From positions 248,001 through 312,000 of IMG/VR virus record IMGVR_UViG_3300031669_000001: 64,000 nt of DNA. One strand, given 5' to 3'. How positions within the stretch are numbered: the stretch's first letter is position 1; each line of letters opens with the position of its first letter. Below the pieces are notes generated by a model. The model saw nothing but the letters and a program-made list of their open reading frames with translations, was not told where the DNA came from and did not search any database. Below are positions 5,635 through 58,942 of the stretch, in pieces. Made by a program: the position numbers and the translations under genes.

Positions 5635-8360
5635 TATGCCACTCCATGTTTGCTTAATCCAAACCATACATGTGTAGAATCTACAACATAGAATGTAAGT
5701 AAGTTAACTGCACTGGCAGTGGTAGACACCGTAGGTATTGTTCCATCATTAGAAATCCAATTGGTGTCAAAGGTTAAGGTCGAAGGTGTTGCATTTTGTG
5801 TGATAGCAATTTGTCCACTTGTCCCAGCTACTGCATTTGTTGGGTTGCTCAATACCTGTGAAGTTGTAGCTTGCAGAGCCAATGAGAAGTTATTCGTTAA
5901 ACTTAAATTCACGGCAACCGCATTTGCTGCAACTGAAAGAGCTGTCACGGCAAACGATTGTGTAGCGGTGAAAGTTTCCACATTTGCGAGATATGCCACA
6001 CCAGCAGGTACTACACCTGTTGGACCTGTTGGGCCTTCAAGACCTGTAGGACCTGTAGGACCTTCTATACCAGCCGGACCTGTAGCTCCATCTGCACCAG
6101 TTGGACCAGTGAGTGAAGGACCGGTAGGACCGTCTAAACCTGTAGGACCGGTAGGACCGTCTAAACCTGTAGGACCGGTAGGACCGTCTAAACCTGTAGG
6201 ACCGGTAGGACCGTCTAAACCTGTAGGACCGGTAGGACCGTCTAAACCAGTAGGACCACCAGCTGGGCCTGTAGCTCCAGTAGGACCAGTTACGAATGAG
6301 TCGGCACCTGTAGGACCTGTAGCACCTTCAAGACCTGTAGGACCAGTTACGAATGAATCTGCACCCGTAGCACCAGTTGGACCAGTGAGTGAAGGACCGG
6401 TAGGACCGTCTAAACCTGTAGGACCGGTAGGACCGTCTAAACCTGTAGGACCACCAGCTGGGCCTGTAGCTCCAGTAGGACCAGTTACGAATGAGTCGGC
6501 ACCTGTAGGACCTGTAGCACCTTCAAGACCTGTAGGACCAGTTACGAATGAATCTGCACCCGTAGCACCAATAGGACCTGTAGGACCTGTAGCACCTTCA
6601 AGACCAGTAGGACCAGTTACGAATGAGTCGGCACCTGTAGGACCTGTAGCACCTTCAAGACCTGTAGGACCAGTTACGAATGAATCTGCACCCGTAGCAC
6701 CAATAGGACCTGTAGGACCTGTAGCACCTTCAAGACCTGTAGGACCAGTTACAAATGAGTCGGCACCAGTTGCACCAGTTGCACCTATAGCTCCAGTAGG
6801 ACCAGTTACGAATGAGTCTGCACCTGTAGGACCTGTTGGACCGTCTAAACCTGTAGGACCTGTAGCACCTTCAAGACCTGTTGGGCCTGTAGGACCACCA
6901 GCTGGACCTGTTGGGCCTTCAAGACCTGTAGGACCTGTAGGGCCACCAAACGCACCTGTAGGACCAACTTCGCCCGTAGGACCCGTAGCACCTTCTAGAC
7001 CAGTAGCTCCAGTAGCTCCAGTAGCGCCAGTGTTACCTAAATTACCTTGAGGACCTGTAGGGCCGGTTACGAATGAGTCTGCACCAGTAGGACCGGTAGG
7101 ACCGCCGAATGGACCTTGAGGACCTGTAGGACCTATCGCGCCAGTAGCGCTGTTAGCACGGATAGTTCCATAAGAAGATGCGCTCCAACCTGTAAAGACA
7201 GATTCTGTGTTCAGATAGATTGTAGTTGGAACAGCCAGAACATATCTCTTTGTTGTCAGAGGAACTTCATAGATTGTAGTGAACGTTGTATTAGTAAAGT
7301 CTTGTGCGTTAGTTTGAAAGTTAAATCCATTGCCTGTACCAATCACCGCGCTTGTAGAATTTGAAGCTCCAGAGAGCGTAGTTACAGATGCACCAGCTGA
7401 AATTGGAGATTCATTTGCAGTACCTGTACCTGTACCGGGACCTGTAGCAACGAAAGTTGTTCCAGATAAACTATCTGTTGCGCCTATCAAAGTAAAATCT
7501 GTATTGCCTGGACTTGCAATTGTGTAAGAATATCCAGTTACAAAAGAACCAGCTGTTACTATTGGAGCAACAAATTGGTAACCTACGAAACCTGAAATAT
7601 CCCACGAACCCGCTGATAGTGAGATGCTTGTAATGTTCGCAGTTAAACCTGATGTCAATGTAACAGGAACAGATATGACAGATTCTACGTAGATACCATC
7701 ACCTGTTGCGCCTGTAGGACCAGTAATTGACAATCCATCTGCACCAGTAGGACCTGTAGGTCCTTCGAGACCCGTAGGACCTGTTACAAAAGAGTCAGCA
7801 CCAGTAGGACCAGTAATAGCTAGACCATCAGGACCTGTAGGACCTGTTACAAAAGAGTCAGCACCAGTAGGACCAGTAGGACCACCAAATGCACCTGTAG
7901 GACCAACATCTCCTGTAGGACCTGTAATCGAAGGACCAGTAGGACCAGTAACTGAAGGACCTGTAGGACCACCAGGTCCTACAAAACCAGATTTGATAGA
8001 ACCATCAAGCTGCATAACTGAGAAGCCGTCTGTGTCAATGTAAGCTAGAGTTTCACTAGATTGAAGAGTTATCTTGCAAAGAACGTATGTGATAGCGTTA
8101 TCGTTGACTTGTAAAGTCACTACGATCGGTGCCGTATCCGCGTTGTAGATAGTGAGAGCTTTTAACTGTCTTTGAGTAGCTGCTGCAGGTGCAGTTACCA
8201 TTGGTTGAGCTATTGTAGAGCCGATGTTTCCATCAGAGCTCAGTGGAGTAAATGTTGTGCTTGTGATGTCAACGTAGCTAGCTGTCCAAGGTATGGAAGC
8301 TCCTGGAAGAGATCCTAAGAAGATCTCAAGAGATTTAGTAGTTGTATCAAAAATGATCAT
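5634..8360 (-). CDS. Collagen-like (Gly-Pro-Thr) tail/whisker fibre protein, 908 aa
   Basis: Two long G-X-Y tracts (GPT, GAT, GLE) separated by globular domains; C-terminal fibre-tip-like domain. Confidence 0.85.
6118..6252. repeat. 27-bp tandem repeat x5 inside the collagen gene
   Basis: ggaccggtaggaccgtctaaacctgta units (encode TGLDGPTGP). Confidence 0.9.
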
Positions 8361-8361
8361 A

Positions 8362-9729
8362 TTAGACTCTCAGTGAAATAAGTGTTAGTACTTGTTGTTG
8401 ATTTGCAGATGACGGTCCTGTAGGTCCTGTTATTGATGGTCCTGCAGGACCTGTAGAACCTGCTGGACCAGTTGGTCCTTCTACATTCGAAGCTGCTCCA
8501 GTAGGTCCCGTTATCGATGGTCCTGTAGCGCCTGTAGGTCCAACTGAACCAACAGGACCGGCGCTTCCAGGTAATCCAGCAACACCTTGAGGACCTGTTG
8601 CGCCTTTTACACCGGCGGGTCCGATAGCGCCAGGCGCACCAACAGGTCCTGTAGGTCCCGCTACACCAGCTCCTGTAGGTCCTGTAATTGATATGCCAGC
8701 GGGACCTGTTGCACCAACCTGTCCAATGGCACCAGCGGGACCTGTAGGACCGTCAACGCTTCTACCGACAGAGTAAGATGCATTCGTTGTCAGTAATACA
8801 GTCTGAGCGCTTAAAATTATAGCAACTTGCTGAGATATTAAGTTAGACGCTAAAGGTGCAGTTTGTGTTAACTCGCCTATAGATCTTGGAGAAGTATCTG
8901 CGTATAAAACTTTACCTTGAGTTAAATCCCAATTCCAATTAGAATTGTAAACTACGCCACCTGTTATTATCTTTGCTGCCTGACCATACGTTAAATTTAC
9001 ATCTACGATACCGATGATAGGGTGTATTAAATCTGCGCCATCTGCTACGCTGATAGTACCTTCACTTTTAACTGAAACACAGTAGAAAGCTGGTATAGAT
9101 TCAGCGGCTATAGACTGAATTTCTAGATCAACAGGAACAGAGTAATTACCTTGATCAACAGCAACAGGTGACGCTGTCGTTAGGAAGTTTCCATTGATCG
9201 TTTTGATTCCCGATCCATCGCTGCCTCGTAGGATGTAACCAGCTGCAACATCATTAGTTGTATCTGGTCCAAGTCCAACTTGAGTTCCCAAAGGTTCAAA
9301 TGTAAAGCTCGATCCACCATTGAAGGAACCTGCAAAGACTCTACACTTTTCTACCCACTGACTTCCACTCCACACCTTCATAATGAATGTGTTTAGATCA
9401 TACCAATGTTGATCTACTGCCGGCGCTGTTGGAGTCACGCTCGATGTTATAGGATCATAAATCGTGTAACTTCTAGTGATGAGACCTGTCGCTAAGTCGA
9501 TATCCCAATAGAGATAGAATGGAGCAGAACCACTGAATGGACCCCAAGCATTTGCAACCGAAGAAACTTCATTGATCAGGTAATTTGCCTGACCGTACGT
9601 AACCGTTACGATGACAGGCGTCGTCGGCGTAGCTAAGATTTGAACGTACGTGCCATTATAGTCAAGGAAAGATGGACTTCCATTAACTATCGGTGCTGTA
9701 ACTATACCTTGCCTGAAATTTAATTTCAT
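8362..9729 (-). CDS. Virion protein with C-terminal collagen-like tract
   Basis: About 120 aa of G-X-Y repeats at the C-terminus; late box upstream; co-transcribed with 5634-8360. Confidence 0.75.
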
Positions 9730-16100: not shown

Positions 16101-16485
16101 CGTCACTTCCCTTCTTAATCGCATCCTCGATTTTATCCCAGCTGGATCCGATTAACACCATGCTGAGAATGACGATCACTCCTAAGAACCAATGGTCGTA
16201 CCATACGAGAACTCCAGCGAGCACCAAGTCGGTGTAGTTGAACAGCTTTGACAACTTTGAACGTGAAGATTTAGCCTTGACTAACATCTCCTTGCCCGTG
16301 TCAGTGGTGATCGCGATGCTGCTGAAGAATAATATCCAGATAAAAAACACCATCAAGTTGTAAGCGCCTGCAACATTCTTGACAATTGCAAAGTAGACCA
16401 GCACCCACATGATAACGTTGTAGACTGTCTGTTTTAGTTCTCTCATTTGTTTTCCTTTGGAAATTGTAAACGCGTCATTCATCAA
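16093..16485 (-). CDS. Hypothetical membrane protein
   Basis: 3-4 hydrophobic segments. Confidence 0.65.
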   Translation of the reverse strand: MMNDAFTISKGKQMRELKQTVYNVIMWVLVYFAIVKNVAGAYNLMVFFIWILFFSSIAITTDTGKEMLVKAKSSRSKLSKLFNYTDLVLAGVLVWYDHWFLGVIVILSMVLIGSSWDKIEDAIKKGSDDE

Positions 16486-17701
16486 GCTCCGCGGTGGTCT
16501 GCAAAAGGTTCAATTGACGTAAGCCAAATTGTTCACGTAGGTAGTTGCGTTCGTAGAAGCCATTGTAGTCTGGCTCCTTGCCGTCCTTCTTGTTCATGAT
16601 CAGCTTGAAGAAAGGATGGTTGTAGCCTTGCGAACCGTAAAGCAACGCAAGCTCTTTCTTTGTCTTGTTACAAACAAGTTCAAAGATGTCATTGACTGTC
16701 CAGATGATCGCATCTATCTCAGCAACCACTCGAGTTTCGATGGCGTTGATCTCGGTGATATCGCAACCTTCACCAACCAGTACCGACTTTAAGTCATCCA
16801 GAGTTTCATTCAACACCATCTCAGCGATGTCACGTTCGCGCAGGAAGGTCATTGCTTTGTGACGCTCCATGTACCAAGCAGTTTTTACCTTCAACATTTC
16901 ACCGCTTTCAAACTGAACTACTACGCCTTCAACATCTGTAGTTTCTTCAATGTAGCGCTTAACGCCCTCGGGATTGTCAAACATCTTCTTGAGGTGATCG
17001 AGTTCAGTTACAACAGGGATATAAAACGATTTTGCAGTTACTTCCAACTCTGCGGTCTTAAAGTATTCACCTGTAACGTTGTGACGAATGTGCAACAAGG
17101 TCAATGAATCGTGCTTGTAACCTATGACTATCCGTGCAACTGGGGAAGTCCACTCGAAGATAGCAGTGAGATCATTCTCAACGCACCAATTGCAAAAATC
17201 GCCGTAGCGTGGATAGGCAAAGGAGGAAGAGAGGAGAAAGGAAGGAGAAGGAGTTGCAGTTTCAGCTAACATCAAGAAGCCCTTAGCTTGGTGTGCAACG
17301 TCAGACACGTAGCTCTTCTTTGACTTTAAATCAAAGTTGAGGTTACTTGGCCATAATTTGTCTGTATTCTTTACAGCGACTGTGTGGATCATTGAACCGT
17401 CGCGCTTGTCCATCACGCGAACAACCTTGGACCAGTCGATATTCTCAAAGAGCACATCTTGATTCTGATTCAGGTTGCTAAATTTGTGAAGTGGGCGGGC
17501 AATTACTTTGCCGTCTTTGAATACGATGCCGCGAGCTTCACGAGAGTACATCTCGTCGAAGGTACCATCGCAAGAGACGATGTAGGAACAAACGACAGTT
17601 CCATTATCTTGGTCCATGAAGCGAATTTCAGGCTTGTGAGCGACAGCCTGACGCATTGCCAAGTCATCAGTAAGAACTGGAAATACCAAATCGTTGCTCA
17701 T
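16475..17701 (-). CDS. rnlA: RNA ligase 1 (T4 Rnl1-like)
   Basis: EARGIVF, RPLHKFSNLN, motif I KRDGSMI, FEWTSP..RIV, EGVVVQF...LKVKTAWY. Confidence 0.9.
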   Translation of the reverse strand: MSNDLVFPVLTDDLAMRQAVAHKPEIRFMDQDNGTVVCSYIVSCDGTFDEMYSREARGIVFKDGKVIARPLHKFSNLNQNQDVLFENIDWSKVVRVMDKRDGSMIHTVAVKNTDKLWPSNLNFDLKSKKSYVSDVAHQAKGFLMLAETATPSPSFLLSSSFAYPRYGDFCNWCVENDLTAIFEWTSPVARIVIGYKHDSLTLLHIRHNVTGEYFKTAELEVTAKSFYIPVVTELDHLKKMFDNPEGVKRYIEETTDVEGVVVQFESGEMLKVKTAWYMERHKAMTFLRERDIAEMVLNETLDDLKSVLVGEGCDITEINAIETRVVAEIDAIIWTVNDIFELVCNKTKKELALLYGSQGYNHPFFKLIMNKKDGKEPDYNGFYERNYLREQFGLRQLNLLQTTAELDE

Positions 17702-28534: not shown

Positions 28535-29251
28535 TTATATTTTTATTTTATCATCTTCCGTAAGAAATTTACATTTTTCAAAATGCCATTGGTTCATGGT
28601 ATTTTTGGATATTTCTCGTTTACAATGAGGACATTGAATTTTCAGGTGGGATGCAGCTATCATCTTTTTCATCTGTTCAGGAGATGAAGTATTTTTACGT
28701 TCTTTATTTGAAGCAATAATACTTTCACGATGATTGGTGGATATAATGCGCTTCTCTCCTTTACGATGTTTACCTTTGCCGCCGATAGACATTTTAGTGA
28801 GTGTCTCAACAGAACGATTTTGTTGAGCTAACGACATTTTGGTACGAGTTTCAACAGAAATGTTTTGTTTAGCGATCTTCATTCTTGCACGTGATTCGGC
28901 AGAATGTTTTCGTCCTGTCATTTTAGCGATCGTTTCCGCGGTATGCCCTGAACTACCACCCCAGATTCCATTTTCAGGCATTAAATTAAGCCATAAATCT
29001 GATTTCACAATGTCTTGATGTTCACTAAACATTAGCGCAAACTTTGTGAGCTCTTCCTGCTCAGTGAACAGACAATACCAAAGAGTCTCTACATACTCGC
29101 GACCATGTTTCTTAATATGACGTTTCCAACGTTTCCCTGATCCAAGGTATTGGAATTTAGAAAGATCACCCGTAGTCTTACCGAAATAACACTTTCCTGT
29201 GATAGAATGCAGCTTGATATAAAGATAGGTAGGTCTAAAGTTAATCGTTAT
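28535..29251 (-). mobile_element. Free-standing GIY-YIG-like homing endonuclease with NUMOD3-type repeats; non-AUG start
   Basis: The frame is open 73 codons upstream of the annotated ATG: (I)TINFRPTYLYIKLHSITGKCYFGKT...YLGSGKRWKRHIKKHG. C-terminus has HTAETIAKM/HSAESRARM repeats and CPHC. Confidence 0.75.
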
Positions 29252-29783
29252 TGATCTCCAAAATCAGATTAAAGCCCTCACTACGAGACGGAGCGACATA
29301 CGAATTGAACATGTTCTTCAGCACAAAAGGAGGGATTACTTTCCCCGTCAAGGCTGCACGTGCATCAAGACGAGCTTGCAACACCTTGTCATCGCAGGTG
29401 AAGTTCAGACAAATCTTGTTGTACGAGTCTGGTACTACGGCAAGTTTCGACGTGCGAGCCTTGCGACCCATGTTTGTTTGATCGTGGAAGATGTTCTTGC
29501 GAGCTAGGATAGCTTTAGCGATCTGCTCTTCCATCTCACGCTTAACCTTCTTCTGATTCACTTTGTGAAAAGCTTCGGAGTACGTCAACCCCATCTTCGC
29601 AGCTTCGATTTCGACTAGGTCGTCCGTCGATGCCAAGATGAATGGATTACACGCACCGTTAGATTCTTCTTGAAGTTTCTTCAAGAATGTAGATTTGCCT
29701 ACACCAGGAGCGCCGACCATCATGACGTATGACGGTGTTTGCCATTCCTGAAGTAAACGCTGGATTGCTGTAGATGGTTTCAT
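29241..29783 (-). CDS. P-loop kinase (polynucleotide kinase / AAA_33 type)
   Basis: MMVGAPGVGKST, STDD, DQTN...R, R...TGK.IP...EGF. Confidence 0.85.
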   Translation of the reverse strand: MKPSTAIQRLLQEWQTPSYVMMVGAPGVGKSTFLKKLQEESNGACNPFILASTDDLVEIEAAKMGLTYSEAFHKVNQKKVKREMEEQIAKAILARKNIFHDQTNMGRKARTSKLAVVPDSYNKICLNFTCDDKVLQARLDARAALTGKVIPPFVLKNMFNSYVAPSRSEGFNLILEINND

Positions 29784-32564: not shown

Positions 32565-32932
32565 TTGACGAATCCATAACGAATCAACATGATAGGACTC
32601 GATCCGTCAGACCACTTACAATCAACCTTGATAGCAAGCTGATTGAATCTTTTTGCTCCGCGATTAGCATCGAAGTACATTTCCTCCTCTACCCAATCGC
32701 TAACCCATGTCAGATTGTTATCGTGAATGATCTGATCTGACCTTGACAGGCTTAGCTTGAGATGTCCACACCAAACTTCAACGAGATTATAACCATCATC
32801 TCGTATCGTAACGTAGAATCTGTTCAGTCTAATCTTGACAACTTCGTAAAGTTGTCCTACTCGCAGTCTAGGTGGTTTATCGAAGTAAGGCATCGATGTC
32901 AGCGTAACTGGAGAACCGATTTCCAAGTTCAT
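32558..32932 (-). CDS. Hypothetical protein
   Basis: 124-aa ORF coupled to the CoaE-CoaD stop. Confidence 0.55.
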   Translation of the reverse strand: MNLEIGSPVTLTSMPYFDKPPRLRVGQLYEVVKIRLNRFYVTIRDDGYNLVEVWCGHLKLSLSRSDQIIHDNNLTWVSDWVEEEMYFDANRGAKRFNQLAIKVDCKWSDGSSPIMLIRYGFVKC

Positions 32933-34020
32933 TTGTGAACGTCCTTGAGCTTTTCAAGAACACACTTTGAAACGTAAGGAGCTGCAACTCTCTCCCACTC
33001 TCGAAGCGCTAAGGCCCCCTTGATCAGAGAAGAACTAATCTCTATCAGTTCACGAGGCGTCATCAAGAAGATCGTTTCAATCTCAGGCGCTATCTTCTTC
33101 TGAAGAAGGTTCAATTGATTTTCATACTCAAGGTCTGTAGCGCCTCGAAGTCCCCTGAAGATAAACTTTGCGCCTGAGTTTGCTGCGTAACTAACGATCA
33201 GTTCGTCGGATGGAATGAAGTCGATTGTGACTCTCGCCATTTGTTCAGGTGACAGGACTTCTTGTAACGTGCACTTTACTAGCTGCGATCTCGTCTCATC
33301 ATCGAAAAGGTATTTCTTAGATGGGTTTGATGCTACAGCGACGATGATATAGTCCACTATATCAAGCGCTCTTTGAATGACCCAGGTGTGTCCCAGTGTA
33401 ATCGGATCGAATGATCCAGACACTATACCGATCTTCTTTCCCTTCAGCTGCTTCTTACGCATGAGGTCAAGAGCTTTCTTTATCTCCAATTGAAGATAAT
33501 TTTCTTCATGTATCGCTCTTATTCCATTGTAGATTATCGCATCGCTAACCGCAAATCTATGTTCGTCTGTAGTTTGAGATTCCATGATAGCCAAAATTTG
33601 ATCTTGTGATCGTCCATCTCTATCACTCACTCGCTGAATCTGTAAGCTAGGGGGAGACACCACTGAGATTACAAAGTCAAACCTTGAAATCAACGTTGGA
33701 GCGTTCTCAACTAATAACGGGAACTCTAGGATAAAGTCATTCCTTTGCATAAGAGTTTCAATCTTCCTAGAGATTATGTCATGAAAGATGAATTCAAGCT
33801 CTTTCATCGCTTGCTTATCTGCAAAAACAATATCACGTATCTTTAATCGATCGCTTGTTCCAAATTCCAGCCTTAAAGCGCTGCATATTTCTGGATTATC
33901 ATACGCATCCCTTACAAATTCATCTATGCTAAAGACGTGATGATTTGGAAGAGCGTCAGCTAACAACTGACATACTGTTGATTTGCCTGAACCTATCCCA
34001 CCTGTTACTACGATCTTCAT
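32929..34020 (-). CDS. coaE-coaD: Fusion of dephospho-CoA kinase (CoaE, N-terminal) and phosphopantetheine adenylyltransferase (CoaD, C-terminal)
   Basis: MKIVVTGGIGSGKSTV...RDIVFAD...PLLVE...QIQRVSDRDG...SQ (CoaE); GSFDPITLGH, NPSKKYLF, FRGLRGATDLEYE, ISSSLIK (CoaD). Confidence 0.9.
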   Translation of the reverse strand: MKIVVTGGIGSGKSTVCQLLADALPNHHVFSIDEFVRDAYDNPEICSALRLEFGTSDRLKIRDIVFADKQAMKELEFIFHDIISRKIETLMQRNDFILEFPLLVENAPTLISRFDFVISVVSPPSLQIQRVSDRDGRSQDQILAIMESQTTDEHRFAVSDAIIYNGIRAIHEENYLQLEIKKALDLMRKKQLKGKKIGIVSGSFDPITLGHTWVIQRALDIVDYIIVAVASNPSKKYLFDDETRSQLVKCTLQEVLSPEQMARVTIDFIPSDELIVSYAANSGAKFIFRGLRGATDLEYENQLNLLQKKIAPEIETIFLMTPRELIEISSSLIKGALALREWERVAAPYVSKCVLEKLKDVHK

Positions 34021-34307
34021 GATATTTTTACCTCGAATGAAGTTTTGATTTCAGCTGGTGTTACCTTCAGCGCCAAAAAGTTCTTGTCACCATAAGTAGC
34101 AGATAAACGTTTTTTGATCTCATCTTCCCATTCTTGCTTTTCGGTGTACGCAACGTACTCTAAAAAGTGTTCTGTTGAAGCTGGATATCCGTGACCTGGA
34201 AAGTCAATGCTTCTCTGATCGCCTGGTATCGAGACAGAACGATTCTCGATGATCGCGTAGTGCTCTGTCTTTGGCACTTCACTTGTGTTATGGCAATATT
34301 TTATCAT
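34017..34307 (-). CDS. Hypothetical protein
   Basis: 96-aa ORF. Confidence 0.6.
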   Translation of the reverse strand: MIKYCHNTSEVPKTEHYAIIENRSVSIPGDQRSIDFPGHGYPASTEHFLEYVAYTEKQEWEDEIKKRLSATYGDKNFLALKVTPAEIKTSFEVKIS

Positions 34308-36693: not shown

Positions 36694-38178
36694 TTACGCG
36701 TAGGTGGTATCTGCCCGTGCCCAAGACTGTACTTCATCGAAGTCTTGGAAGCGTTTTTGCGCACCATCTTTTGACCACAATCTCCAGCCAGGACCATCAA
36801 CGAAGAAGGAAGCTGGGTTGGCAGTGCAATCACGAACCTCCAACTCACCGCTTTCCAGTTCGAAAGGACGAACCAAACCACGCAGAGACTTCTTGCCCAG
36901 GTCGGTGATTGGTTCTTTAACCAAAGACCTCCAACCGTTTGCATCCATCATCGCGATTGCCTTCATGCTGAAGCTGAAGTCATCGCGAGCACCTTCGTGG
37001 GTAACACCAGCACCCATACCCAAGGTCAGGCTGTCCATGCTGTAACCTTTGCTAGTGAATCCTTCCAGCACTGGCTCGATGGTGTTGATGCGGATTCCAT
37101 CACCTTGGATGACGGCGGTGCAAGGTGCCAAGACCTTGTAACCGGCTGCATTCTTGTGGACACCGAAGGTATCTTCGATGTCCTTTGCGACCCGCGCCGG
37201 CTCAACAGTTGCATCGCCAGAGTCAGGACGCATGACCATCACACCACCACTGTTCTCGATCTCTTCGCGGAAGGTTTCACCCATGTACTCACGAACGAAG
37301 CGGCGAGCATTGTAGGTGTCGATAACGACGCTCAACAGTGGGATGCCTATGCCGCGCTTAGTACGAGCAACAACGGCGTGCAGGCGTTTCACTGCCATCT
37401 TCGCGGCGCCGAAGTCATCACGCTTGTCAGCGTCGCTGTGCGCGCACATTACGCTGTGCTCAGTAGCTTCAACGCTTGAGGTGTATGGCTTGTTGGAGAA
37501 AACGGTGTTCTTGTTGAACAGAGCTTTGATGTAACTGTTTGCGCGAGTGCAATCGCTACCATCGAACATCGCTGCGTGAGCGATACCCGCGATGACAGCA
37601 GCTTCATCTGGACTGTCTGCACCACGATCGCCGAAGTTGTGCAGCTTGTAATTCAGCATTCCCATGTTGGCGCCGGTCTTCTGCATGTACTTGGCGATGA
37701 TGATGCGAGCTGCGCGGCAGGTACTTGCTACGGTAGACATCTTCCAGACGGTGCATTGAACGACAGTCTCGACATAAGTAGGCAACCAGGCAAAGAGATC
37801 GTGAGTATTGACGATACCCAGCACTGGAGTTTGAGGCTTGACGATACGACCTTCTTCAACTGCCCATACTTCCAGCGGCAGCTTGCCGTCCAAATAGTCG
37901 ACCATGTACTGCCAGTCGGCGCGGTTGAATTCGTATCCTTGTTGGGTGATTTCGATATCAGCTTCATCGACCATCCACTGTTCGATGCGCACTGAAGCCA
38001 AAAAGTTTGCTACGTAGGTTTGACCCATCGCGACGATCTTATCTGCGTACTTGCTGGGTTTACGTGGAACGATAGCTGCGTAAGAACGCAGAGTTCCGTC
38101 GGGCAATTCTTGCCAGTGACCAGCTTTGTAGCTGTCGCAGGCCAGAATAAAGTTGAAGCGCTTTATCATTTGTAACAT
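36694..38178 (-). CDS. nadV: Nicotinamide phosphoribosyltransferase
   Basis: DSYKAGH, LHNFGDRG, EATEHSVM, SVVIDTYN, VMRPDSGD, VIQGDG, GMGAG, KEPITDLGKKS. Confidence 0.95.
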   Translation of the reverse strand: MLQMIKRFNFILACDSYKAGHWQELPDGTLRSYAAIVPRKPSKYADKIVAMGQTYVANFLASVRIEQWMVDEADIEITQQGYEFNRADWQYMVDYLDGKLPLEVWAVEEGRIVKPQTPVLGIVNTHDLFAWLPTYVETVVQCTVWKMSTVASTCRAARIIIAKYMQKTGANMGMLNYKLHNFGDRGADSPDEAAVIAGIAHAAMFDGSDCTRANSYIKALFNKNTVFSNKPYTSSVEATEHSVMCAHSDADKRDDFGAAKMAVKRLHAVVARTKRGIGIPLLSVVIDTYNARRFVREYMGETFREEIENSGGVMVMRPDSGDATVEPARVAKDIEDTFGVHKNAAGYKVLAPCTAVIQGDGIRINTIEPVLEGFTSKGYSMDSLTLGMGAGVTHEGARDDFSFSMKAIAMMDANGWRSLVKEPITDLGKKSLRGLVRPFELESGELEVRDCTANPASFFVDGPGWRLWSKDGAQKRFQDFDEVQSWARADTTYA

Positions 38179-38870: not shown

Positions 38871-39113
38871 CTATTCTAATGGAAGTACATACCTTTTTTG
38901 GAACTGGAATCCTTCTCCGCGAAGGTAACATCCAAGATATGGACCTCTTTGACCTGGATCACGAGGGAAACCTTCTTCGAACAGCTTAACTTCTCCATAT
39001 CCAAGAGAGTTCAGCCAAGTTTGAAGTTGATCTTTAGTCAAGATATAGTCGTCAAGGTCTTGCCACTCTGTAACGGGAGTATCACAAAACACTCGACGAC
39101 TCTGGTACGTCAT
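38871..39113 (-). CDS. Hypothetical protein
   Basis: 80-aa ORF coupled to the ATP-grasp stop. Confidence 0.55.
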   Translation of the reverse strand: MTYQSRRVFCDTPVTEWQDLDDYILTKDQLQTWLNSLGYGEVKLFEEGFPRDPGQRGPYLGCYLRGEGFQFQKRYVLPLE

Positions 39114-39922
39114 CTCTCCATCCCTTCCAACGCCATCACTATCTCCATCACGTTTCCTGCGTAGAAGCCAGATGCATTGATGGTGTTGATCTCTACTATC
39201 TTCATGCCGTCAGGAGTCTCACAGACGTCAAGTACGTAAGCTCTGTGCGGTTGCCATGCACTCGTTGTCATGCTCAAGGTGATATCACCAAAGCGGATAA
39301 CTTGGGCTGCAAACCAACGCACCGCGTCATCAACGACAGGTGAATAGATCACGCGATTGCCTCTTTTGTAAAGAGAGGCTGTAACAATTTTCTTATCGAC
39401 TATCCAAAAACGGTACTCAGCAAAGATCTTCTTTGGAGTGCAGACTTGGACGAGAGTGCTAGGCATTAAGCTGTTACCGTAGTCCAGTTCCAACACGCAA
39501 ACGTTACGCTGCCAATCCTGAAATTCTTCCCACTCAAAGACCCGGCCAGCGAAGACCTTCGAGTCCTCGATAGGACGAATGAACCGCGGCTCATCATCAG
39601 TCCAATGCACGTCTTTGAACTGAACAACTTTAGCGTCAGCGTTCAGCATCATGTCACCCCAATGCTGCAATTGAATCTCAAAGTTGATAGGCTCGAGATC
39701 ATACACTCCTGGGTTCCAGTTGTTTGCCTTTGCTGCATGACGCATCGAGTATGATCCAAAGCAGATAACTTTGTCCTGCTTGGGTTCAGCGGGCGGTACC
39801 AACTCACCGATGAAGGGTACTACCTTGTGAATAGAGTATGGAATCTTGAAGCGATCCAGCGTTCCAACCAAGTTATCCCACTCGGCTTCATTGAACAAAT
39901 TTGTTTGTAAAATCCAGTGCAT
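39110..39922 (-). CDS. ATP-grasp domain protein (DUF4343/R2K-like)
   Basis: FIRP...K.F.G.V; EYRFWIV; YVLDV...KIVEIN..NASGFY. Confidence 0.8.
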   Translation of the reverse strand: MHWILQTNLFNEAEWDNLVGTLDRFKIPYSIHKVVPFIGELVPPAEPKQDKVICFGSYSMRHAAKANNWNPGVYDLEPINFEIQLQHWGDMMLNADAKVVQFKDVHWTDDEPRFIRPIEDSKVFAGRVFEWEEFQDWQRNVCVLELDYGNSLMPSTLVQVCTPKKIFAEYRFWIVDKKIVTASLYKRGNRVIYSPVVDDAVRWFAAQVIRFGDITLSMTTSAWQPHRAYVLDVCETPDGMKIVEINTINASGFYAGNVMEIVMALEGMER

Positions 39923-40255: not shown

Positions 40256-41413
40256 TCATAATTTCCCCAGCATGTACTCGATGATGAAGTAGTGATCTTC
40301 GAAGAACATCTCAGGGCTCTTCATCACTTCATCCAATGGAACCCACCAGGCCTTCTCAGCATCATCGTCACCCTTAACCTTCGGCAGCGATATCTTGCCG
40401 TCTACTACGAAGTCAGGCAGCTTAAACAAAAATCCCTTGGTGACAGTGCGACCGCGTAAGGAACGTTCAGGATAATCGAAGTCTTCTTTGAAGATCATCG
40501 AGCTGCGCAGAATCGGTTCAGGAACCTTGATGCGAGTCTCTTCACGCAGTTCACGGATTGCAGCTTCAAACAATCGTTCTTTGGGGTTCAAGAAGCCTCC
40601 AGGCAGCGCCCACAAACCTTTTCCAGGACGGCTACGACGTTTAACCAGCAGCACGTGACCAGTTTGGATGACGATTGAATCAACCGTCTGGAAGATTGGT
40701 TCGTAGCGAAGACCGGGATCATTTTGACCATAAGTTCCAGGATCACGTGGTATGTTCGGTTTACGATACTCGATGTTGAAGAGATGCTCTTCACGCAGGT
40801 TGTCGTAGAATGGAGTCTCTTCGAAAGCGCGAAGCTCATTAATCGTTTCAGCTGGCAAGAATGCGTTCAATAACAATTCTGCGTGGTTAGCGGTGATCTC
40901 GTTGCCATCGAATGAACGGCCAAAGTAGATTTCACGGACTGCGGTGGCGGTCAAGAAGCGACTGACTTCCATATTTTCATCGACCATGTCAGCGATGAAG
41001 TTAGGAAAGTACTTCAAGTAGAACGTTGAGGAATCACGATCAGCACCAGTGATTCTGATCTCAATGTCTTTGGGATTGAGTTTGACTTGCTCAGCGCTAT
41101 CAACGAACTCGTTGATCACCTTGTTAACGTTTGCTATCCAAAGTTGATCATTGTAGGGGAAGTCTCGAATGCCACGCACTGATACCGGTGCATTTTTAGC
41201 GTGTGGAGTCCAAGGACGAGATGCCCACTTATCAATGACGCTTGCACGTTCTTCAAACGTCCAGGGATTTTTGGGATTTCTTGCTTGATTGATGGAACCG
41301 ATGAGGACCAGCACAGCGTCCGAGCGCTCACGTGCTCGCTTCAGAACTTCTGCATGTCCATTGTGGAATGGGGAAAATCGACCGATGTACACGGTCAGTA
41401 CAAACTTAGCCAT
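40256..41413 (-). CDS. natV: Bifunctional NMN adenylyltransferase / ADP-ribose pyrophosphatase (NadM-Nudix, NatV)
   Basis: YIGRFSPFHNGH, KNPWTFEER, D.PYNDQLW; Nudix box GLWALPGGF...E.L.EAAIRELREET; DDAEKAWW; FFEDH. Confidence 0.95.
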   Translation of the reverse strand: MAKFVLTVYIGRFSPFHNGHAEVLKRARERSDAVLVLIGSINQARNPKNPWTFEERASVIDKWASRPWTPHAKNAPVSVRGIRDFPYNDQLWIANVNKVINEFVDSAEQVKLNPKDIEIRITGADRDSSTFYLKYFPNFIADMVDENMEVSRFLTATAVREIYFGRSFDGNEITANHAELLLNAFLPAETINELRAFEETPFYDNLREEHLFNIEYRKPNIPRDPGTYGQNDPGLRYEPIFQTVDSIVIQTGHVLLVKRRSRPGKGLWALPGGFLNPKERLFEAAIRELREETRIKVPEPILRSSMIFKEDFDYPERSLRGRTVTKGFLFKLPDFVVDGKISLPKVKGDDDAEKAWWVPLDEVMKSPEMFFEDHYFIIEYMLGKL

Positions 41414-43686: not shown

Positions 43687-43812
43687 TGTCGGCGCGAGCA
43701 GGATGCCGGTATTCACTTCGCTAATCTCGCGCTGCTCGGGCGTGGCATCTTTTTCCTCGACGATGCGCTGCACATCGCCCTGTGCGTCGCGCACGATGCG
43801 TCCGTAGCCGTG
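43687..43812 (-). pseudogene. glmU: 126-bp internal fragment of a bacterial glmU gene
   Basis: Alternative frame reads [42 protein letters not shown], matching GlmU GYGRI...IVE.KDA..EQ..I.E.NTGI. 80/126 GC; 32/42 codons end in G/C. Confidence 0.9.
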
Positions 43813-44683
43813 ATGTGAGCCAACGCGTAAATTCAAACTCTTGAGGGATAGCTTCGAATTGACAAGCTCTCAAGAACTTAACTTCCGCTGGACCACTGAT
43901 AGGAGGACAAGAAATTTCCTCATAGGGATCTTTTTTGGTAGTTGGTAACGACAGAAAGTTTTCTCTATTTTCGATTGTCGATCCTGTGATCTTCTCAAGA
44001 AGCTCGAAGTGTCGTTCGTAAACGTGAAAAGAATCTGCAGAGTGATGATAGTTACCGTACTTCAACTCTGGATAAAATTCACGCAATGCATTGAGCACCA
44101 TCTCATGAGTAAAACTGAAAGCTGGAGCATCATTTGCCATTCCATAGACAGAATCCTGTGAACGCATCCTAACGCTCATGTTCAGAAAGTTTTCACGAAT
44201 CCTGAAGTTTAGCGCGTATGTACAAGGGACGTCATTAGTGTCGCTAAGAAGATGATCTCTGCTTAGAATCGATATAGAAGCTCTGCGAGAATCTTTGTCA
44301 TTCTTTAACTGATTGACGACGTTGTCAAATTGACTTACGGGAGTATCTCTGAAGATATATTGCCCGTAGTTTGAGTTTATGGATCCATCACGATTGATGA
44401 GATTGCCCCACATCTTTGCAAAGTCTGCTATGGAAGTATCAAACTTGTCACCTTTCAGGTACCAGAGAAATTCTCTCTTGACGTAGTCTAACTTGAAGCC
44501 GCGAGATGCAAAGCTTGTGAATCGGACGAAAGGTGGAAGGTTGTAGGTATAGTTTTCTATTTCAATGGACTTTTGACCTCGAGGAGATACTCTCTTTCCT
44601 CTTGCAATTAAGTCTTCATAGATGTTTCTAAATGTTGATTCGCTACTGACTACATTATCGTTGTGGTGTCCTGCATTTGACAT
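43721..44683 (-). CDS. Thymidylate-synthase-fold enzyme, probable dCMP hydroxymethylase/modifying enzyme
   Basis: DSRRA, DVPCT catalytic Cys, [13 protein letters not shown] (Asp in place of the ThyA Asn), SFHVYERH. The last ~29 aa derive out of frame from the glmU insert. Confidence 0.75.
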
Positions 44684-44880: not shown

Positions 44881-45984
44881 TTATTTTGACAAAGATTTTG
44901 ATAGATTTTTTGATAATTCATCTTCAATCAATTTAACATTTTTAATCAATCGGGCATCAGTTGGCTCAAATTCAAGTGCTTTTTTTGCCAAAGTCAATGA
45001 TTCTTCTTTAAGACCTAAATTATAAGCTGCTATAGCACAATAATCATAAGGAAAAGAATACCAAGCGGCGGGCTCACAAATATACGACATCGGCTTCTCG
45101 GTGATCTGCAACATTCGTTTCATGGCAAAGTAGAGACCATGCCAATTTTGCATCTGATAGTAAGTTTTTCCAAGGTCTAACCATGGCTCACGTTCACCAA
45201 TAGCTTCAGCGCACGCTTTCAAACCCCAAATTTCAGCTTGCTTAACGTCACCCTTTTCAAGGTAGCATCTAGATAGGAATCTCATAGAAGCGCAACGCTC
45301 AGCATCCCACTTAGCACGTGGAAGAGATAGATGTCGCTTCAATTCATCGATAGCTTTGTCATACTGTTTGTAGTACATGTATTCTCGACCGAGATAGTGA
45401 GAATTTCTGTCATCTTCAGGTTCATCTCTACAACCCATCTCCAATAGAGGTAGGTAACTTCCTCTAGACTTTGTTTTATCAGGATAATGAAAGAGCGTGA
45501 AGTCATGACAGTAAGTTTGAACTTCTTTGATGTCATAGTTGTGAAGAACTTCATGGACAGGTTTTACCCAACGATAACCTTTGCGAGAGTGAATCTTGTC
45601 ATACCAAAAAGTGGTCCCAGGTCTACCATCTGGAAGAGTGTTCCAGACGTATTGATAGCGAAGTCTAGTTGTTTCAGGAGTCCATGCTTTTTCGATCGCA
45701 GCTCTCCAACCTGGTGTAAGAACCTCATCAAGATCGATACAGACGCAGACGTCTACATCTTCTGGAACGAACTGTAATGATGCATTACGAGGAATGTCAA
45801 ACCTCCACGGCTTCATCTCGATCGAGTGAACTATCGCACCTTCATCCCGAAGCATCTGTACTGTGTTGTCTGTTGATCCGGTGTCAGCAACCACGATAAG
45901 GTCAGCTTCATCTTTGATAGAAGCCATGAAGCGCTTTACAAACTTTTCCTCATTCTTACAGATTGTGTAAACTGCTATCTTCAT
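44881..45984 (-). CDS. GT2 glycosyltransferase with TPR-like C-terminus
   Basis: AVYTICKNEE, VVADTGSTD.T, FDIPRN, IDLDE (DxD), VHE; helical TPR-like tail. Confidence 0.9.
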   Translation of the reverse strand: MKIAVYTICKNEEKFVKRFMASIKDEADLIVVADTGSTDNTVQMLRDEGAIVHSIEMKPWRFDIPRNASLQFVPEDVDVCVCIDLDEVLTPGWRAAIEKAWTPETTRLRYQYVWNTLPDGRPGTTFWYDKIHSRKGYRWVKPVHEVLHNYDIKEVQTYCHDFTLFHYPDKTKSRGSYLPLLEMGCRDEPEDDRNSHYLGREYMYYKQYDKAIDELKRHLSLPRAKWDAERCASMRFLSRCYLEKGDVKQAEIWGLKACAEAIGEREPWLDLGKTYYQMQNWHGLYFAMKRMLQITEKPMSYICEPAAWYSFPYDYCAIAAYNLGLKEESLTLAKKALEFEPTDARLIKNVKLIEDELSKNLSKSLSK

Positions 45985-47000
45985 TTTGCTTCCTTTATCT
46001 GCTTTGTAAGTTGATCAAATCTTGTTCCCCAACAACCTGCGTTATATTCGTAGCCGTATGTACGCTCTGTGATCTTTGCTGCACGTTCCATTGTAGCAAC
46101 AGCATCTGATTGTCGACCAGCTTCAAGATAAGTTTGTGCTAGATAAACAACGTATTCACGAACCTTAGGTGCATGCTTGACTACGTTCATCATGTTCATG
46201 ATCGCCGAATCATAATCCTTCTGACGCTTGTTGATTCCAGAGAGTTGATAATGTAGAAAGGCCTTATCAGAATCAGGTAATGTGAGAGCATGCTCAATCG
46301 CTTCTGCCGCTTCTCGATAGAAACCTGCGTTGATATATTCACCTGCTAGAAATGAAAATGTCTTCCAACGCTTCTTATCTTCGATAGCAGACTGTTTAAG
46401 CATCGTAAGATAACTTCCTCTATTCTTTGAGGTGTCTGGTTTTTGAGTCATTTGAATGTCTTTGAGCCACCTAACTTCATCAGGCGTACCATCACACTTA
46501 ACAATATGTTCGTGAACAGGAAGCTTCCACATATAACCATGTCGAGTGTGAATTCTTTCATGCCAATGTTCACTTACATTGCTGTTAGTTGTCTGCCAAT
46601 CCCAGATCGTTCTGAACCTGTGGTGATAACGATCATGTGGTTTACCTCTAGCTGCGATATCTTCCTCAACTGCAGTCTTTAAGATTTGGTACCAACCAGG
46701 CTCCAGCATCTCATCTGCATCAATGGAAACGCAAATATCAACATCACTTGGTAATGACATGAGAGCTGTATTGCGCGCATCGTCGAAACGCCACGGACTA
46801 ACGAATATATTTTTGACGATAAGATTTTTATGTTCTTTGCTTAAATCTGCTAAAATGTCGATTGTCTCATCTTTTGATCCAGTATCACAAATTACGATGG
46901 AATCAGCTTCTTTTATCGATTCATAACAACGTTTTATGAATTCTTTTTCATCTTTGCAGATCATGTAAATGCCTATCTTTACTGTCATTAAATTCTCCAT
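45981..47000 (-). CDS. GT2 glycosyltransferase with TPR-like C-terminus (paralogue)
   Basis: GIYMICKDE, ICDTGSKD.T, WRFDDARN, SIDADE, VHE. Confidence 0.9.
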   Translation of the reverse strand: MENLMTVKIGIYMICKDEKEFIKRCYESIKEADSIVICDTGSKDETIDILADLSKEHKNLIVKNIFVSPWRFDDARNTALMSLPSDVDICVSIDADEMLEPGWYQILKTAVEEDIAARGKPHDRYHHRFRTIWDWQTTNSNVSEHWHERIHTRHGYMWKLPVHEHIVKCDGTPDEVRWLKDIQMTQKPDTSKNRGSYLTMLKQSAIEDKKRWKTFSFLAGEYINAGFYREAAEAIEHALTLPDSDKAFLHYQLSGINKRQKDYDSAIMNMMNVVKHAPKVREYVVYLAQTYLEAGRQSDAVATMERAAKITERTYGYEYNAGCWGTRFDQLTKQIKEAK

Positions 47001-47066: not shown

Positions 47067-51299
<4,233 letters not shown>

Positions 51300-58551: not shown

Positions 58552-58599
58552 TTCGTCAGCACGCTGGCGAACCAACGTGCTAGTTGTTAGATTTCTTTA

Positions 58600-58936: not shown

Positions 58937-58942
58937 GAATCC

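What the first reader, a model, noticed from the sequence alone, without database searches (positions are those of the whole stretch)
32929..34020. CoaE-CoaD fusion: the last two steps of CoA synthesis in one phage protein, in kinase-first order
Seen: complete dephospho-CoA kinase motifs followed by complete PPAT motifs in one ORF. Established: most bacteria encode coaD and coaE separately, and eukaryotic CoA synthase has the PPAT-DPCK order. Inference: an unusual auxiliary metabolic gene boosting CoA, or making dephospho-CoA (an RNA cap substrate), or replenishing cofactor drained by a defence system, parallel to the NAD salvage nearby.
Basis: partly seen in the sequence, partly recalled or inferred. 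Interest (0 to 1): 0.65.

Follow-up and report, generated by a model that had tools for sequence, protein, structure and literature searches.

The report
Jumbo-phage fused CoaE–CoaD CoA enzyme
A 345-kb soil jumbo phage encodes one protein that joins the last two enzymes of coenzyme A synthesis (kinase first); it belongs to a recurrent but undescribed phage gene family that probably turns the host's 4'-phosphopantetheine into CoA during infection.

Summary
Window 32929-34020 (-) is one 363-aa ORF. Its N-terminal half is a dephospho-CoA kinase (CoaE) and its C-terminal half a bacterial-type phosphopantetheine adenylyltransferase (CoaD). Both halves pass NCBIfam equivalog cut-offs, keep the catalytic motifs, and fold (pLDDT 93) onto solved DPCK and PPAT structures.

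The genome is a complete 345-kb jumbo phage whose DNA is held by a soil metagenome run. The gene is not a one-off: 67 representatives (50%-identity clusters) share the architecture, and every context inspected is phage-like. Other jumbo phages carry the same two genes as an adjacent coaE->coaD pair, in two cases with an ATGA stop/start overlap. The fusion is therefore best read as a merger of a phage two-gene cassette, which explains the kinase-first order.

Five complete genomes lack PanD, CoaX and CoaB, so these phages can only convert 4'-phosphopantetheine to CoA. In the window's sub-lineage the gene lies 3-7 kb from NAMPT and NMNAT-Nudix (a NARP2-type NAD+ rebuilding pair).

Kinase-first fusions also arose separately in CPR bacteria. 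None was found in 401 Pseudomonadota genomes. The physiological role (CoA-pool maintenance or counter-defence) is untested, and I found no paper on this family. It is a new variant of a known kind, of moderate interest.

The parts
32929..34020 (-). Fused coaE-coaD gene (363 aa, P0001): bifunctional dephospho-CoA kinase / phosphopantetheine adenylyltransferase
   Evidence: ORF; Pfam; NCBIfam equivalogs both over their cut-offs; AF2 pLDDT 93.1; Foldseek matches to PPAT and DPCK
33466..34020 (-). CoaE (DPCK) domain, aa 1-185: P-loop G7-G-I-G-S-G-K13-S14, D33, lid arginines R130 and R134, Q149, N165
   Evidence: D33 aligns with the second Asp of the cellular DxD motif, which corresponds to the conserved D32 of M. 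tuberculosis CoaE named in PMC13629385
33445..33498 (-). Inter-domain linker, one long helix (aa 175-192) with no disordered spacer
   Evidence: Secondary structure of the AF2 model, helix H175-192, block pLDDT 86-91
32932..33438 (-). CoaD (bacterial-type PPAT) domain, aa 195-363: G-S-F-D-P-I-T-x-G-H211, K235, R289-G-L-R292, D296, Y299-E300, S329-S-S331
   Evidence: Foldseek target TM 0.85-0.94 to E. coli, S. aureus and T. maritima PPAT; Atlas structural match TM 0.91-0.92
34017..34307 (-). Upstream 96-aa ORF of unknown function whose stop overlaps the fusion's ATG by 4 nt, so it is probably translationally coupled
   Evidence: Coordinates; no Pfam hit; a homologue lies directly upstream of the fusion in L009 and elsewhere in L003
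32558..32932 (-). Downstream 124-aa ORF of unknown function whose ATG overlaps the end of the fusion
   Evidence: Coordinates; no Pfam hit; no homologue in related loci
36694..38178 (-). Nicotinamide phosphoribosyltransferase (NAMPT), a conserved neighbour in the window's sub-lineage
   Evidence: Pfam NAMPT_N plus NAPRTase; NF006629 at 361 bits; found beside the fusion in L002, L003, L004, L008 and L009 and beside the unfused pair in L013
40256..41413 (-). Bifunctional NMN adenylyltransferase / Nudix hydrolase (NadM-type). Together with NAMPT it has the composition of the NARP2 NAD+ reconstitution pathway
   Evidence: Pfam; NF003786 at 329.6 bits, below the strict cut-off of 397; synteny; NARP2 definition in bioRxiv 10.1101/2024.02.11.579819
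29241..29783 (-). AAA_33 P-loop kinase, a conserved neighbour 2-5 kb downstream of the fusion in related phages
   Evidence: Pfam; homologues in L003, L004, L008 and L009 at 38-70% identity
29819..30334 (-). NT5C-type 5'-nucleotidase, a neighbour of the fusion or cassette in several relatives
   Evidence: Pfam; adjacent to the fusion in L004, L006, L007 and L010, and present in L056

Best explanation
The gene encodes a bifunctional enzyme for the last two steps of coenzyme A synthesis. The C-terminal PPAT domain adenylylates 4'-phosphopantetheine with ATP to give dephospho-CoA. The N-terminal DPCK domain phosphorylates the 3'-OH of dephospho-CoA with a second ATP to give CoA. It is the fused form of a coaE->coaD cassette that is characteristic of a group of T4-related jumbo phages. 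The fusion arose when the stop between two adjacent, translationally coupled genes was lost, which fixes the kinase-first order and guarantees 1:1 production of both activities. These phages carry none of the upstream steps, so the enzyme must draw on the host's 4'-phosphopantetheine, whether newly made or released by CoA and acyl-carrier-protein turnover. Its likely effect is to keep up or raise the CoA pool of the infected cell independently of host coaD and coaE expression and regulation. It would then form part of a cofactor-maintenance gene set together with the neighbouring NAD+ salvage genes. Shown here: domain identities, intact catalytic residues, the fold, recurrence in phages, the cassette and fusion states, absence of upstream genes, and synteny. 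Inferred: enzymatic activity, substrate source, effect on the CoA pool, and benefit to the phage.
For: Both halves pass equivalog-level models, and only DPCK or PPAT structures match them by sequence and by fold. The catalytic motifs of both halves are invariant across 41 homologues down to 33% identity, which indicates purifying selection on both activities. 67 representatives share the fused architecture, and all contexts inspected are phage-like. The same order occurs as separate genes in L017 and L019 (ATGA overlap), L056 (1-nt gap), L013 and L015. PanD, CoaX and CoaB were not found in five complete genomes carrying the fused gene or the adjacent coaE/coaD pair. One relative (L008) has a PanD-like gene immediately downstream of the fusion, which ties the gene to the CoA pathway. 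NAMPT is present in 5 of 5 complete genomes with the cassette and lies within 3-7 kb in the window's sub-lineage. PMC8721197 discusses the idea that CoA can be obtained with PPAT and DPCK alone from scavenged 4'-phosphopantetheine.
Against: There is no biochemical, expression or metabolite evidence: the only runs holding this DNA are soil DNA metagenomes, with none on record as RNA. The host is unknown, and hosts normally have their own coaD and coaE, so the benefit is not obvious. The kinase domain is about 10 residues shorter than cellular CoaE in the CoA-binding subdomain and lacks the first Asp of the cellular DxD motif. The linkage to NAD genes does not hold in the more distant homologues L005/L011, L006/L010, L012 and L024.
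Confidence: 0.72

Rival explanations
1. Counter-defence by cofactor reconstitution. The enzyme rebuilds CoA from 4'-phosphopantetheine after a host immune effector has cleaved or depleted CoA, in the way NARP1, NARP2 and NARP3 rebuild NAD+.
For: In the window and five relatives the gene sits 3-7 kb from NAMPT and NMNAT-Nudix, a pair with the composition of NARP2, which was shown experimentally to overcome NAD+-depleting defences (bioRxiv 10.1101/2024.02.11.579819). The phage encodes exactly the steps needed to rebuild CoA from the product of pyrophosphate-bond cleavage and nothing upstream.
Against: A full-text search found no CoA-depleting defence system, and the NARP papers do not mention CoA. 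The synteny is limited to one sub-lineage. The region is a general nucleotide and cofactor metabolism block (NT5C, thymidylate synthase-like and thymidylate kinase-like genes), so adjacency may only reflect co-regulated early genes.
Confidence: 0.12
2. The enzyme supplies dephospho-CoA as a non-canonical initiating nucleotide for 5'-capping of phage RNAs.
For: PPAT makes dephospho-CoA. The neighbouring genes raise NAD+, another known cap donor (established knowledge; not tested here).
Against: An intact DPCK domain, which consumes dephospho-CoA, is fused or directly adjacent in every phage examined, and its catalytic residues are invariant. A cap-supply function would favour PPAT alone.
Confidence: 0.03
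3. The two domains have diverged to act on a different substrate pair, for example another phospho-compound that is adenylylated and then 3'-phosphorylated. The CoA annotation would then be only a family resemblance.
For: The phage CoaD and CoaE each form clades apart from the cellular sequences sampled. The kinase's CoA-binding subdomain is shortened and one Asp of the DxD motif is lost. In P0018 the kinase half scores below the equivalog cut-off.
Against: The window protein passes both equivalog cut-offs. The PPAT residues aligned with those that contact ATP and phosphopantetheine in solved PPATs are invariant. PPAT target TM reaches 0.94. There is a PanD-like neighbour in L008.
Confidence: 0.08
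4. The single ORF is an assembly or sequencing artefact (a frameshift joining two genes) or a piece of host DNA in the contig.
For: Related phages have the genes separate, with overlapping stop and start, so a 1-nt error could mimic a fusion.
Against: The fused state recurs in 67 independent cluster representatives from many samples. The linker is a confidently modelled helix. The contig is a complete 345-kb phage genome with direct terminal repeats. The local GC of 0.425 is typical of the window.
Confidence: 0.02

Closest known systems
Eukaryotic bifunctional CoA synthase (COASY)
   Same: One polypeptide carries both PPAT and DPCK activities for the last two CoA steps. In the Atlas the eukaryotic clusters are the only other large clusters with CoaE plus CTP_transf_like.
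   Different: The domain order is reversed: PPAT comes first in COASY (established knowledge; consistent with the CoaD-first proteins P0171 and P0206). COASY proteins are longer (468-586 aa clusters), score only 0.83-0.84 by features against 0.94-0.95 for the phage clusters, and are eukaryotic rather than viral. The phage PPAT half is of the bacterial CoaD type (TIGR01510). This is an independent fusion.
Monofunctional bacterial CoaD (PPAT) and CoaE (DPCK)
   Same: Each half of the phage protein is an equivalog-level match with the same motifs and fold.
   Different: In bacteria the two are separate and usually unlinked genes: matches fell at two separate places in most of 394 Pseudomonadota genomes. 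Identity is only 27-45%. The phage domains form their own clades.
Adjacent coaE->coaD cassette of other jumbo phages (L013, L015, L017, L019, L056)
   Same: Same two genes in the same order and in the same kind of genome (complete 343-425 kb genomes with terminal repeats), at 34-45% identity.
   Different: They are two ORFs: ATGA overlap in L017 and L019, a 1-nt gap in L056, and a ~170-aa ORF in between in L015. The window has one continuous ORF with a helical linker.
Kinase-first CoaE-CoaD fusions of CPR bacteria (P0255 Candidatus Saccharibacteria; P0178 Candidatus Nomurabacteria; P0160)
   Same: Same domain order and similar length (369-371 aa), in organisms that depend on another cell.
   Different: They sit in a cellular context (FtsH, MurJ, LepA, Adk). 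Their domain scores against the phage profile are much lower (about 100 bits against 130-276). They fall in separate clades in both domain trees, which points to a separate fusion event. Some carry a third C-terminal part (573-629 aa).
NARP2 (phage Nampt + Nmnat NAD+ reconstitution pathway)
   Same: These are phage-encoded late steps of a cofactor pathway, encoded next to the CoA gene in this sub-lineage. The logic of rebuilding an ADP-containing cofactor from a late precursor is the same.
   Different: NARP2 acts on NAD+, and its counter-defence role has been shown experimentally. For CoA neither a depleting defence nor a protective effect is known.
Stand-alone phage coaD genes (Caulobacter and Brevundimonas jumbo phages, Campylobacter phages)
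   Same: These are phage-borne PPATs at 32-36% identity to the C-terminal half and are annotated as PPAT.
   Different: They have no kinase half: 0 of 50,697 phage records cover 80% or more of the query, and only 15 records match the CoaE half at all.

Membership tests
Bacterial phosphopantetheine adenylyltransferase (CoaD/PPAT, TIGR01510) | Score above the curated equivalog cut-off over the full model | tested here: met
   139.1 bits against a cut-off of 103.3; model positions 2-153 of 155 matched to aa 198-360
Bacterial phosphopantetheine adenylyltransferase (CoaD/PPAT, TIGR01510) | Nucleotidyltransferase (T/H)xGH motif and the RGLR, D-x-x-YE and ISSS ATP/substrate-binding motifs | tested here: met
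   G202-S-F-D-P-I-T-L-G-H211, K235, R289-G-L-R292, D296, Y299-E300 and S329-S-S331 are invariant or nearly invariant in 41 homologues. They align with the same motifs of T. maritima and S. aureus PPAT
Bacterial phosphopantetheine adenylyltransferase (CoaD/PPAT, TIGR01510) | PPAT Rossmann-like fold | tested here: met
   Foldseek target TM 0.85-0.94 and rmsd 1.4-2.2 A to many PPAT structures; Atlas TM 0.91-0.92
Bacterial phosphopantetheine adenylyltransferase (CoaD/PPAT, TIGR01510) | Homohexameric assembly and catalytic activity on 4'-phosphopantetheine | not testable with these tools
   A hexamer of the 363-aa protein exceeds the size limit of the complex predictor; activity needs an enzyme assay
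Dephospho-CoA kinase (CoaE/DPCK, TIGR00152) | Score above the curated equivalog cut-off | tested here: met
   88.6 bits against a cut-off of 65.55, aa 3-170; Pfam CoaE 89.3 bits
Dephospho-CoA kinase (CoaE/DPCK, TIGR00152) | Walker A P-loop, conserved Asp after strand 2, and lid arginines | tested here: met
   G7-G-I-G-S-G-K13-S14, D33, R130 and R134 are invariant or nearly invariant. D33 aligns with the second Asp of the cellular DxD motif. K14, D32 and R140 are named as the conserved residues of M. tuberculosis CoaE in PMC13629385. The first Asp of DxD is not conserved in the phage family
Dephospho-CoA kinase (CoaE/DPCK, TIGR00152) | DPCK three-domain P-loop kinase fold | tested here: met
   Foldseek target TM 0.79 to Burkholderia DPCK 4i1u and 0.65-0.70 to E. 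coli DPCK. The lower values reflect a CoA-binding subdomain about 10 residues shorter
Dephospho-CoA kinase (CoaE/DPCK, TIGR00152) | Phosphorylation of the 3'-OH of dephospho-CoA | not testable with these tools
   Needs an enzyme assay or complementation
Eukaryotic CoA synthase (COASY) | Domain order PPAT then DPCK, in a eukaryotic lineage | tested here: not met
   The order here is DPCK then PPAT. The phage clusters are distinct from the eukaryotic clusters. It works like COASY but is not a member
Phage cofactor-reconstitution counter-defence (NARP-like) | Relieves a defence system that depletes the cofactor | not testable with these tools
   No CoA-depleting defence found in the literature. 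The only evidence is synteny with a NARP2-type gene pair
Phage coaE-coaD cassette/fusion family (defined here) | Both domains fall inside the phage clades, with the kinase-first arrangement on a phage genome | tested here: met
   P0001 lies within the 66-of-67 CoaE clade (SH-like support 99) and within the CoaD clade that excludes all 79 GTDB CoaDs. It is on a complete 345-kb phage genome with terminal repeats

The most novel reading that the evidence does not exclude
The coaE-coaD cassette or fusion is a 'CoA reconstitution pathway'. Under this reading, some bacterial immune effector destroys or sequesters CoA on infection, for example by cleaving its pyrophosphate bond to 4'-phosphopantetheine and 3',5'-ADP. 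These jumbo phages would then rebuild CoA from that product with two ATP, alongside their NARP2-type NAD+ rebuilding genes. That would extend cofactor-depletion immunity and its viral countermeasure from NAD+ to CoA.
Probability: 0.1. Interest if true: 0.85.

Novelty: new variant of a known kind. Interest (0 to 1): 0.45.

Why it matters
Phage-encoded NAD+ salvage has recently been shown to be a counter-defence. This finding shows that a sizeable group of jumbo phages also carries a dedicated two-step module for the second major ADP-containing cofactor, CoA. The module is often next to the NAD+ genes and always lacks the upstream pathway. That gives a directly testable question: does CoA become limiting, or is it attacked, during infection? 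It also documents a clear case of convergent evolution. A single-chain CoA synthase arose at least three times, in eukaryotes, in CPR bacteria and in phages, and the phage case preserves the likely intermediate (an ATGA-coupled gene pair). The compact 363-aa enzyme could also be a convenient tool for making CoA analogues from phosphopantetheine derivatives.

Tried and rejected
1. Near-identical DNA in 50,697 phage records: no match. By protein, no record covers 80% or more of the query. The uncultured 462-kb phage LR756500.1, which had two matching places, has a stand-alone CoaE with no CoaD within 8 kb, so it is not a fusion.

2. I first counted all ten IMG/VR loci matching residues 1-360 as fusions, and described all five complete genomes as fusion-bearing. 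Re-inspection showed that five loci (L013, L015, L017, L019, L056, including three of the complete genomes) have two separate ORFs. That claim is withdrawn.

3. I searched five complete genomes for further CoA-related genes. PanD, CoaX and CoaB were not found. An acyl-carrier PP-binding domain was not found above its cut-off. GNAT acetyltransferases occur in only 2 of 5. There is therefore no evidence for a phage CoA-consuming pathway that would explain the need. CoaA (PRK family), CoaC, PanB, PanC and phosphopantetheinyl transferase were not searched.

4. The downstream 124-aa ORF of the window has the same length as the PanD-like gene that follows the fusion in L008. It has no Pfam hit and no similarity to it, so I treat this as coincidence.

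5. The literature held no paper on a phage DPCK/PPAT, none on CoA-depleting defence, and none on Patescibacteria DPCK fusions.

6. Expression: only two soil DNA runs hold the sequence and none is on record as RNA.

8. One context look-up (P0155) was not sent because the service was busy. One genome search failed on a handle format and was corrected.

Full report
**1. The observation**

Window 32929..34020 on the minus strand is a single 363-aa ORF with an ATG start. Pfam places CoaE at aa 3-165 (89.3 bits) and CTP_transf_like at aa 200-334 (53.2 bits). NCBIfam's equivalog models both exceed their curated cut-offs: TIGR00152 dephospho-CoA kinase scores 88.6 against 65.55, and TIGR01510 coaD scores 139.1 against 103.3. 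PHROGs knows the C-terminal half only as an 'unknown function' family (phrog_29208) and has no specific family for the kinase half.

Searched separately against all PDB sequences, the N-terminal half finds only dephospho-CoA kinases (best E 1.6e-15) and the C-terminal half only PPATs (best E 2.4e-27). An AlphaFold2 model built from 41 homologues is confident throughout (mean pLDDT 93.1, pTM 0.74). It shows two alpha/beta domains joined by one long helix at aa 175-192. Foldseek superposes the C-terminal domain on PPAT structures at target TM 0.85-0.94 and the N-terminal domain on DPCK structures at 0.65-0.79.

**2. Are both active sites intact?**

In an alignment of 41 full-length homologues (33-69% identical to the window protein), the invariant and nearly invariant columns are the catalytic ones.
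- Kinase half: the P-loop G7..G12-K13-S14, D33, R130, R134, Q149 and N165.
- PPAT half: the G-S-F-D-P-x-T-x-G-H211 motif, K235, R289-G-x-R292, D296, Y299-E300, S329-S-S331 and K334.

In an alignment with named cellular CoaE proteins, D33 lies in the column of the second Asp of their DxD motif. The first Asp is not kept in the phage family, and its CoA-binding subdomain is about 10 residues shorter. A 2026 paper on M. tuberculosis CoaE names K14, D32 and R140 as the strictly conserved residues (PMC13629385). By register from the P-loop lysine these correspond to K13, D33 and the lid arginines here. I conclude that both halves are under selection as enzymes. Activity itself is inferred.

**3. 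What genome is this?**

The window is bases 248001-312000 of a 345,069-bp IMG/VR virus record with direct terminal repeats, rated complete. It encodes T4-type topoisomerase II subunits, an RnlA-type RNA ligase and several collagen-like tail fibres.

By the topoisomerase large subunit, the nearest cultured phages are jumbo or large myoviruses of Xanthomonas, Ralstonia, Stenotrophomonas and Pseudomonas at 43-48% identity. None of these holds the fusion. The only run that holds the DNA fully is a soil metagenome. The host is unknown; a soil proteobacterium is a reasonable guess but no more than that.

**4. How common is the architecture?**

- The word-based search found 43 further proteins with both domains, all metagenomic.
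- The exhaustive profile search over 1.84 billion representatives found a graded series of kinase-first proteins. Splitting the profile into its two halves gave 67 core representatives (CoaD-half score 130-276 bits) and a separate lower tier (70-125 bits).
- The ESM Atlas has three clusters (55, 81 and 81 members) with this architecture whose commonest taxon is Uroviricota. The only other clusters with the domain pair are eukaryotic CoA synthases.
- Every context I inspected for the core family is phage-like, with dense co-directional small ORFs, RNA ligase, NAMPT, gp23-like and similar genes. Several lie on contigs of 130-360 kb.

So the gene belongs to a recurrent phage family. I found no paper that describes it.

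**5. Fusion or cassette?**

Five IMG/VR loci that matched residues 1-360 turned out to hold two ORFs in different frames, in the same coaE->coaD order.
- In L017 (343-kb complete genome) and L019 (350 kb) the coaE stop overlaps the coaD start as ATGA.
- In L056 (425 kb) the two are 1 nt apart.
- In L013 they overlap.
- In L015 a ~170-aa ORF with no Pfam hit lies between them.

Many of the stand-alone, complete ~165-175-aa CoaDs from metagenomes also fall among the phage sequences in the CoaD tree.

On a concatenated tree the five unfused pairs form two groups. They sit on the far side of a well-supported branch (SH-aLRT 95) from the main fused clade, which holds 57 of 68 core rows. At least two changes of state are needed. 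The tree is unrooted and was built with quick methods, so direction is not proven. The simplest reading is that a translationally coupled coaE-coaD pair is ancestral in these phages, and that loss of the stop merged the genes. That accounts for the kinase-first order without invoking any functional reason for it.

**6. Is it common in cells?**

- Among the best 80 loci from one genome of each of about 186,000 species, all matched only the CoaD half.
- In 401 Pseudomonadota genomes, 394 had matches, typically at two separate places, and none of the 150 best matches spanned both halves. A further 550 weaker matches were not listed.
- The lower tier of the profile search does contain cellular kinase-first fusions. 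P0160 lies between FtsH, MurJ, LepA and adenylate kinase. Its relatives are named Candidatus Saccharibacteria and Candidatus Nomurabacteria. P0181 (624 aa, with an extra C-terminal part) lies among ABC and RND transporters.
- CoaD-first fusions also exist (P0163, P0171, P0206).

In both domain trees these groups fall in several clades away from the phage family. The two genes have therefore been joined repeatedly. It cannot be judged for an unknown host.

**7. Pathway context**

Five complete genomes carrying the fusion or the cassette have no PanD, type III pantothenate kinase or CoaB. They also have no acyl-carrier domain above its cut-off. CoaA, CoaC, PanB and PanC were not searched. The module can therefore only start from 4'-phosphopantetheine.

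PMC8721197 discusses the idea that CoA can be obtained with PPAT and DPCK alone from scavenged 4'-phosphopantetheine, for reduced-genome organisms. The CPR fusions fit the same pattern. One phage relative (L008; its fusion is 47% identical and its NMNAT-Nudix 69% identical to the window's) has a PanD-like gene immediately downstream. That gene has a Pfam Asp_decarbox hit and scores 42 bits on TIGR00223, below the equivalog cut-off. This ties the fusion to CoA metabolism rather than to some unrelated chemistry.

**8. Neighbourhood**

In the window, NAMPT (36694..38178) and a NadM-type NMNAT-Nudix (40256..41413) lie 3 and 6 kb upstream on the same strand. The same trio occurs within 6-8 kb in L002, L003, L004, L008 and L009, although their fusion proteins are only 33-60% identical. 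NAMPT also lies beside the unfused pair in L013. The more distant homologues L005/L011, L006/L010, L012 and L024 lack the NAD genes nearby. Even so, all five complete genomes have an NAMPT somewhere.

Nampt plus Nmnat is the composition of NARP2, which was shown to overcome NAD+-depleting defences (bioRxiv 10.1101/2024.02.11.579819). The wider block also holds NT5C, thymidylate synthase-like and thymidylate kinase-like genes and an AAA_33 kinase, so it is a general nucleotide and cofactor region.

**9. Mechanism and role**

The best-supported account is a bifunctional enzyme. It converts host 4'-phosphopantetheine to dephospho-CoA (C-terminal domain) and then to CoA (N-terminal domain), using two ATP. 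This would maintain or raise the CoA pool of the infected cell independently of the host's own enzymes. I give this 0.72 overall; the enzymatic identity alone I would put nearer 0.85.

The rivals are:
- a NARP-like counter-defence (0.12), attractive because of the synteny but with no known CoA-depleting immunity;
- altered substrate specificity (0.08);
- dephospho-CoA supply for RNA caps (0.03), disfavoured because an intact kinase always accompanies the PPAT;
- an artefact (0.02).

**10. Verdict**

The gene works like a eukaryotic CoA synthase but is not a member of that family. It is a bacterial-type CoaE plus CoaD merged independently, in the opposite order, within a phage-specific cassette. 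I rate it a new variant of a known kind with moderate interest (0.45). Jumbo phages are known to carry cofactor genes, so a specialist would be interested rather than astonished. The conserved pairing with NAD+ rebuilding genes does open a concrete, testable question about CoA during infection.

**Limits**

- The trees are FastTree or quick IQ-TREE and are unrooted.
- Taxon names of the CPR proteins come from MAG records.
- There are no expression or biochemical data.
- Read laying, complex prediction and alternative genetic codes were not used.

Noticed in passing
window 58555..58937 (-); Rfam match 58646..58905: The phage encodes a permuted (two-piece type) tmRNA. ARAGORN gives the tag peptide ANDANGALALAA, and Rfam tmRNA_permuted scores 84.5 bits against a gathering score of 47. 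Its tag and permuted type might hint at the host lineage.
   Followed up: partly
L008:7145-7519 (+): A PanD-like aspartate 1-decarboxylase gene (124 aa; Pfam Asp_decarbox; TIGR00223 at 42 bits, below the equivalog cut-off) lies immediately downstream of the fusion in a related phage contig. It would be a second CoA-pathway gene in a phage.
   Followed up: partly
L015:4345-4863 (+): A ~170-aa ORF with no Pfam hit is inserted between coaE and coaD in one jumbo-phage relative. It splits the cassette that is ATGA-coupled in its closest relative L017 (68% identical).
   Followed up: partly
Proteins P0156, P0161, P0178, P0181, P0189, P0216, P0239, P0249 (570-630 aa); L170:3171-5045: Some bacterial (partly CPR) kinase-first CoaE-CoaD proteins carry an extra C-terminal part of about 200-250 aa with no Pfam match, giving a three-part architecture of unknown meaning.
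   Followed up: no
window 39110..39922 (-): An R2K-clade ATP-grasp protein (Pfam R2K_3, 72.6 bits) sits between NAMPT and NMNAT-Nudix. Its role is unknown.
   Followed up: no
window 43721..44683, 44881..45984, 45981..47000 (-): A thymidylate-synthase-like gene is followed by two family-2 glycosyltransferases with C-terminal TPR repeats. This could be a DNA base hypermodification or glycosylation module.
   Followed up: no
window 47067..51299 (+), 5634..8360 (-), 8362..9729 (-): Three large collagen-like tail-fibre proteins are present (PHROG tail fibre families, many repeated stretches). The local GC peak of 0.536 at 48-50 kb coincides with the largest one.
   Followed up: no
window 28535..29032 (-): A small ORF with a NUMOD3 motif, probably a homing endonuclease, lies next to the AAA_33 kinase.
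   Followed up: no
ESM Atlas clusters listed: Other kinase plus CTP_transf_like fusions exist. Guanylate kinase + CTP_transf_like occurs in Bacteroidota, and APS-kinase-like + CTP_transf_like occurs in phages and Pseudomonadota. This suggests a wider theme of kinase-nucleotidyltransferase mergers.
   Followed up: no
L002:3425-6050, L005:2418-3437; window 16475..17701 (-): RNA ligase and HD/AAA_33 (Pnkp-like) genes recur close to the fusion in relatives, and an RnlA-type ligase is in the window. An RNA-repair set appears to travel in the same genomic block.
   Followed up: no
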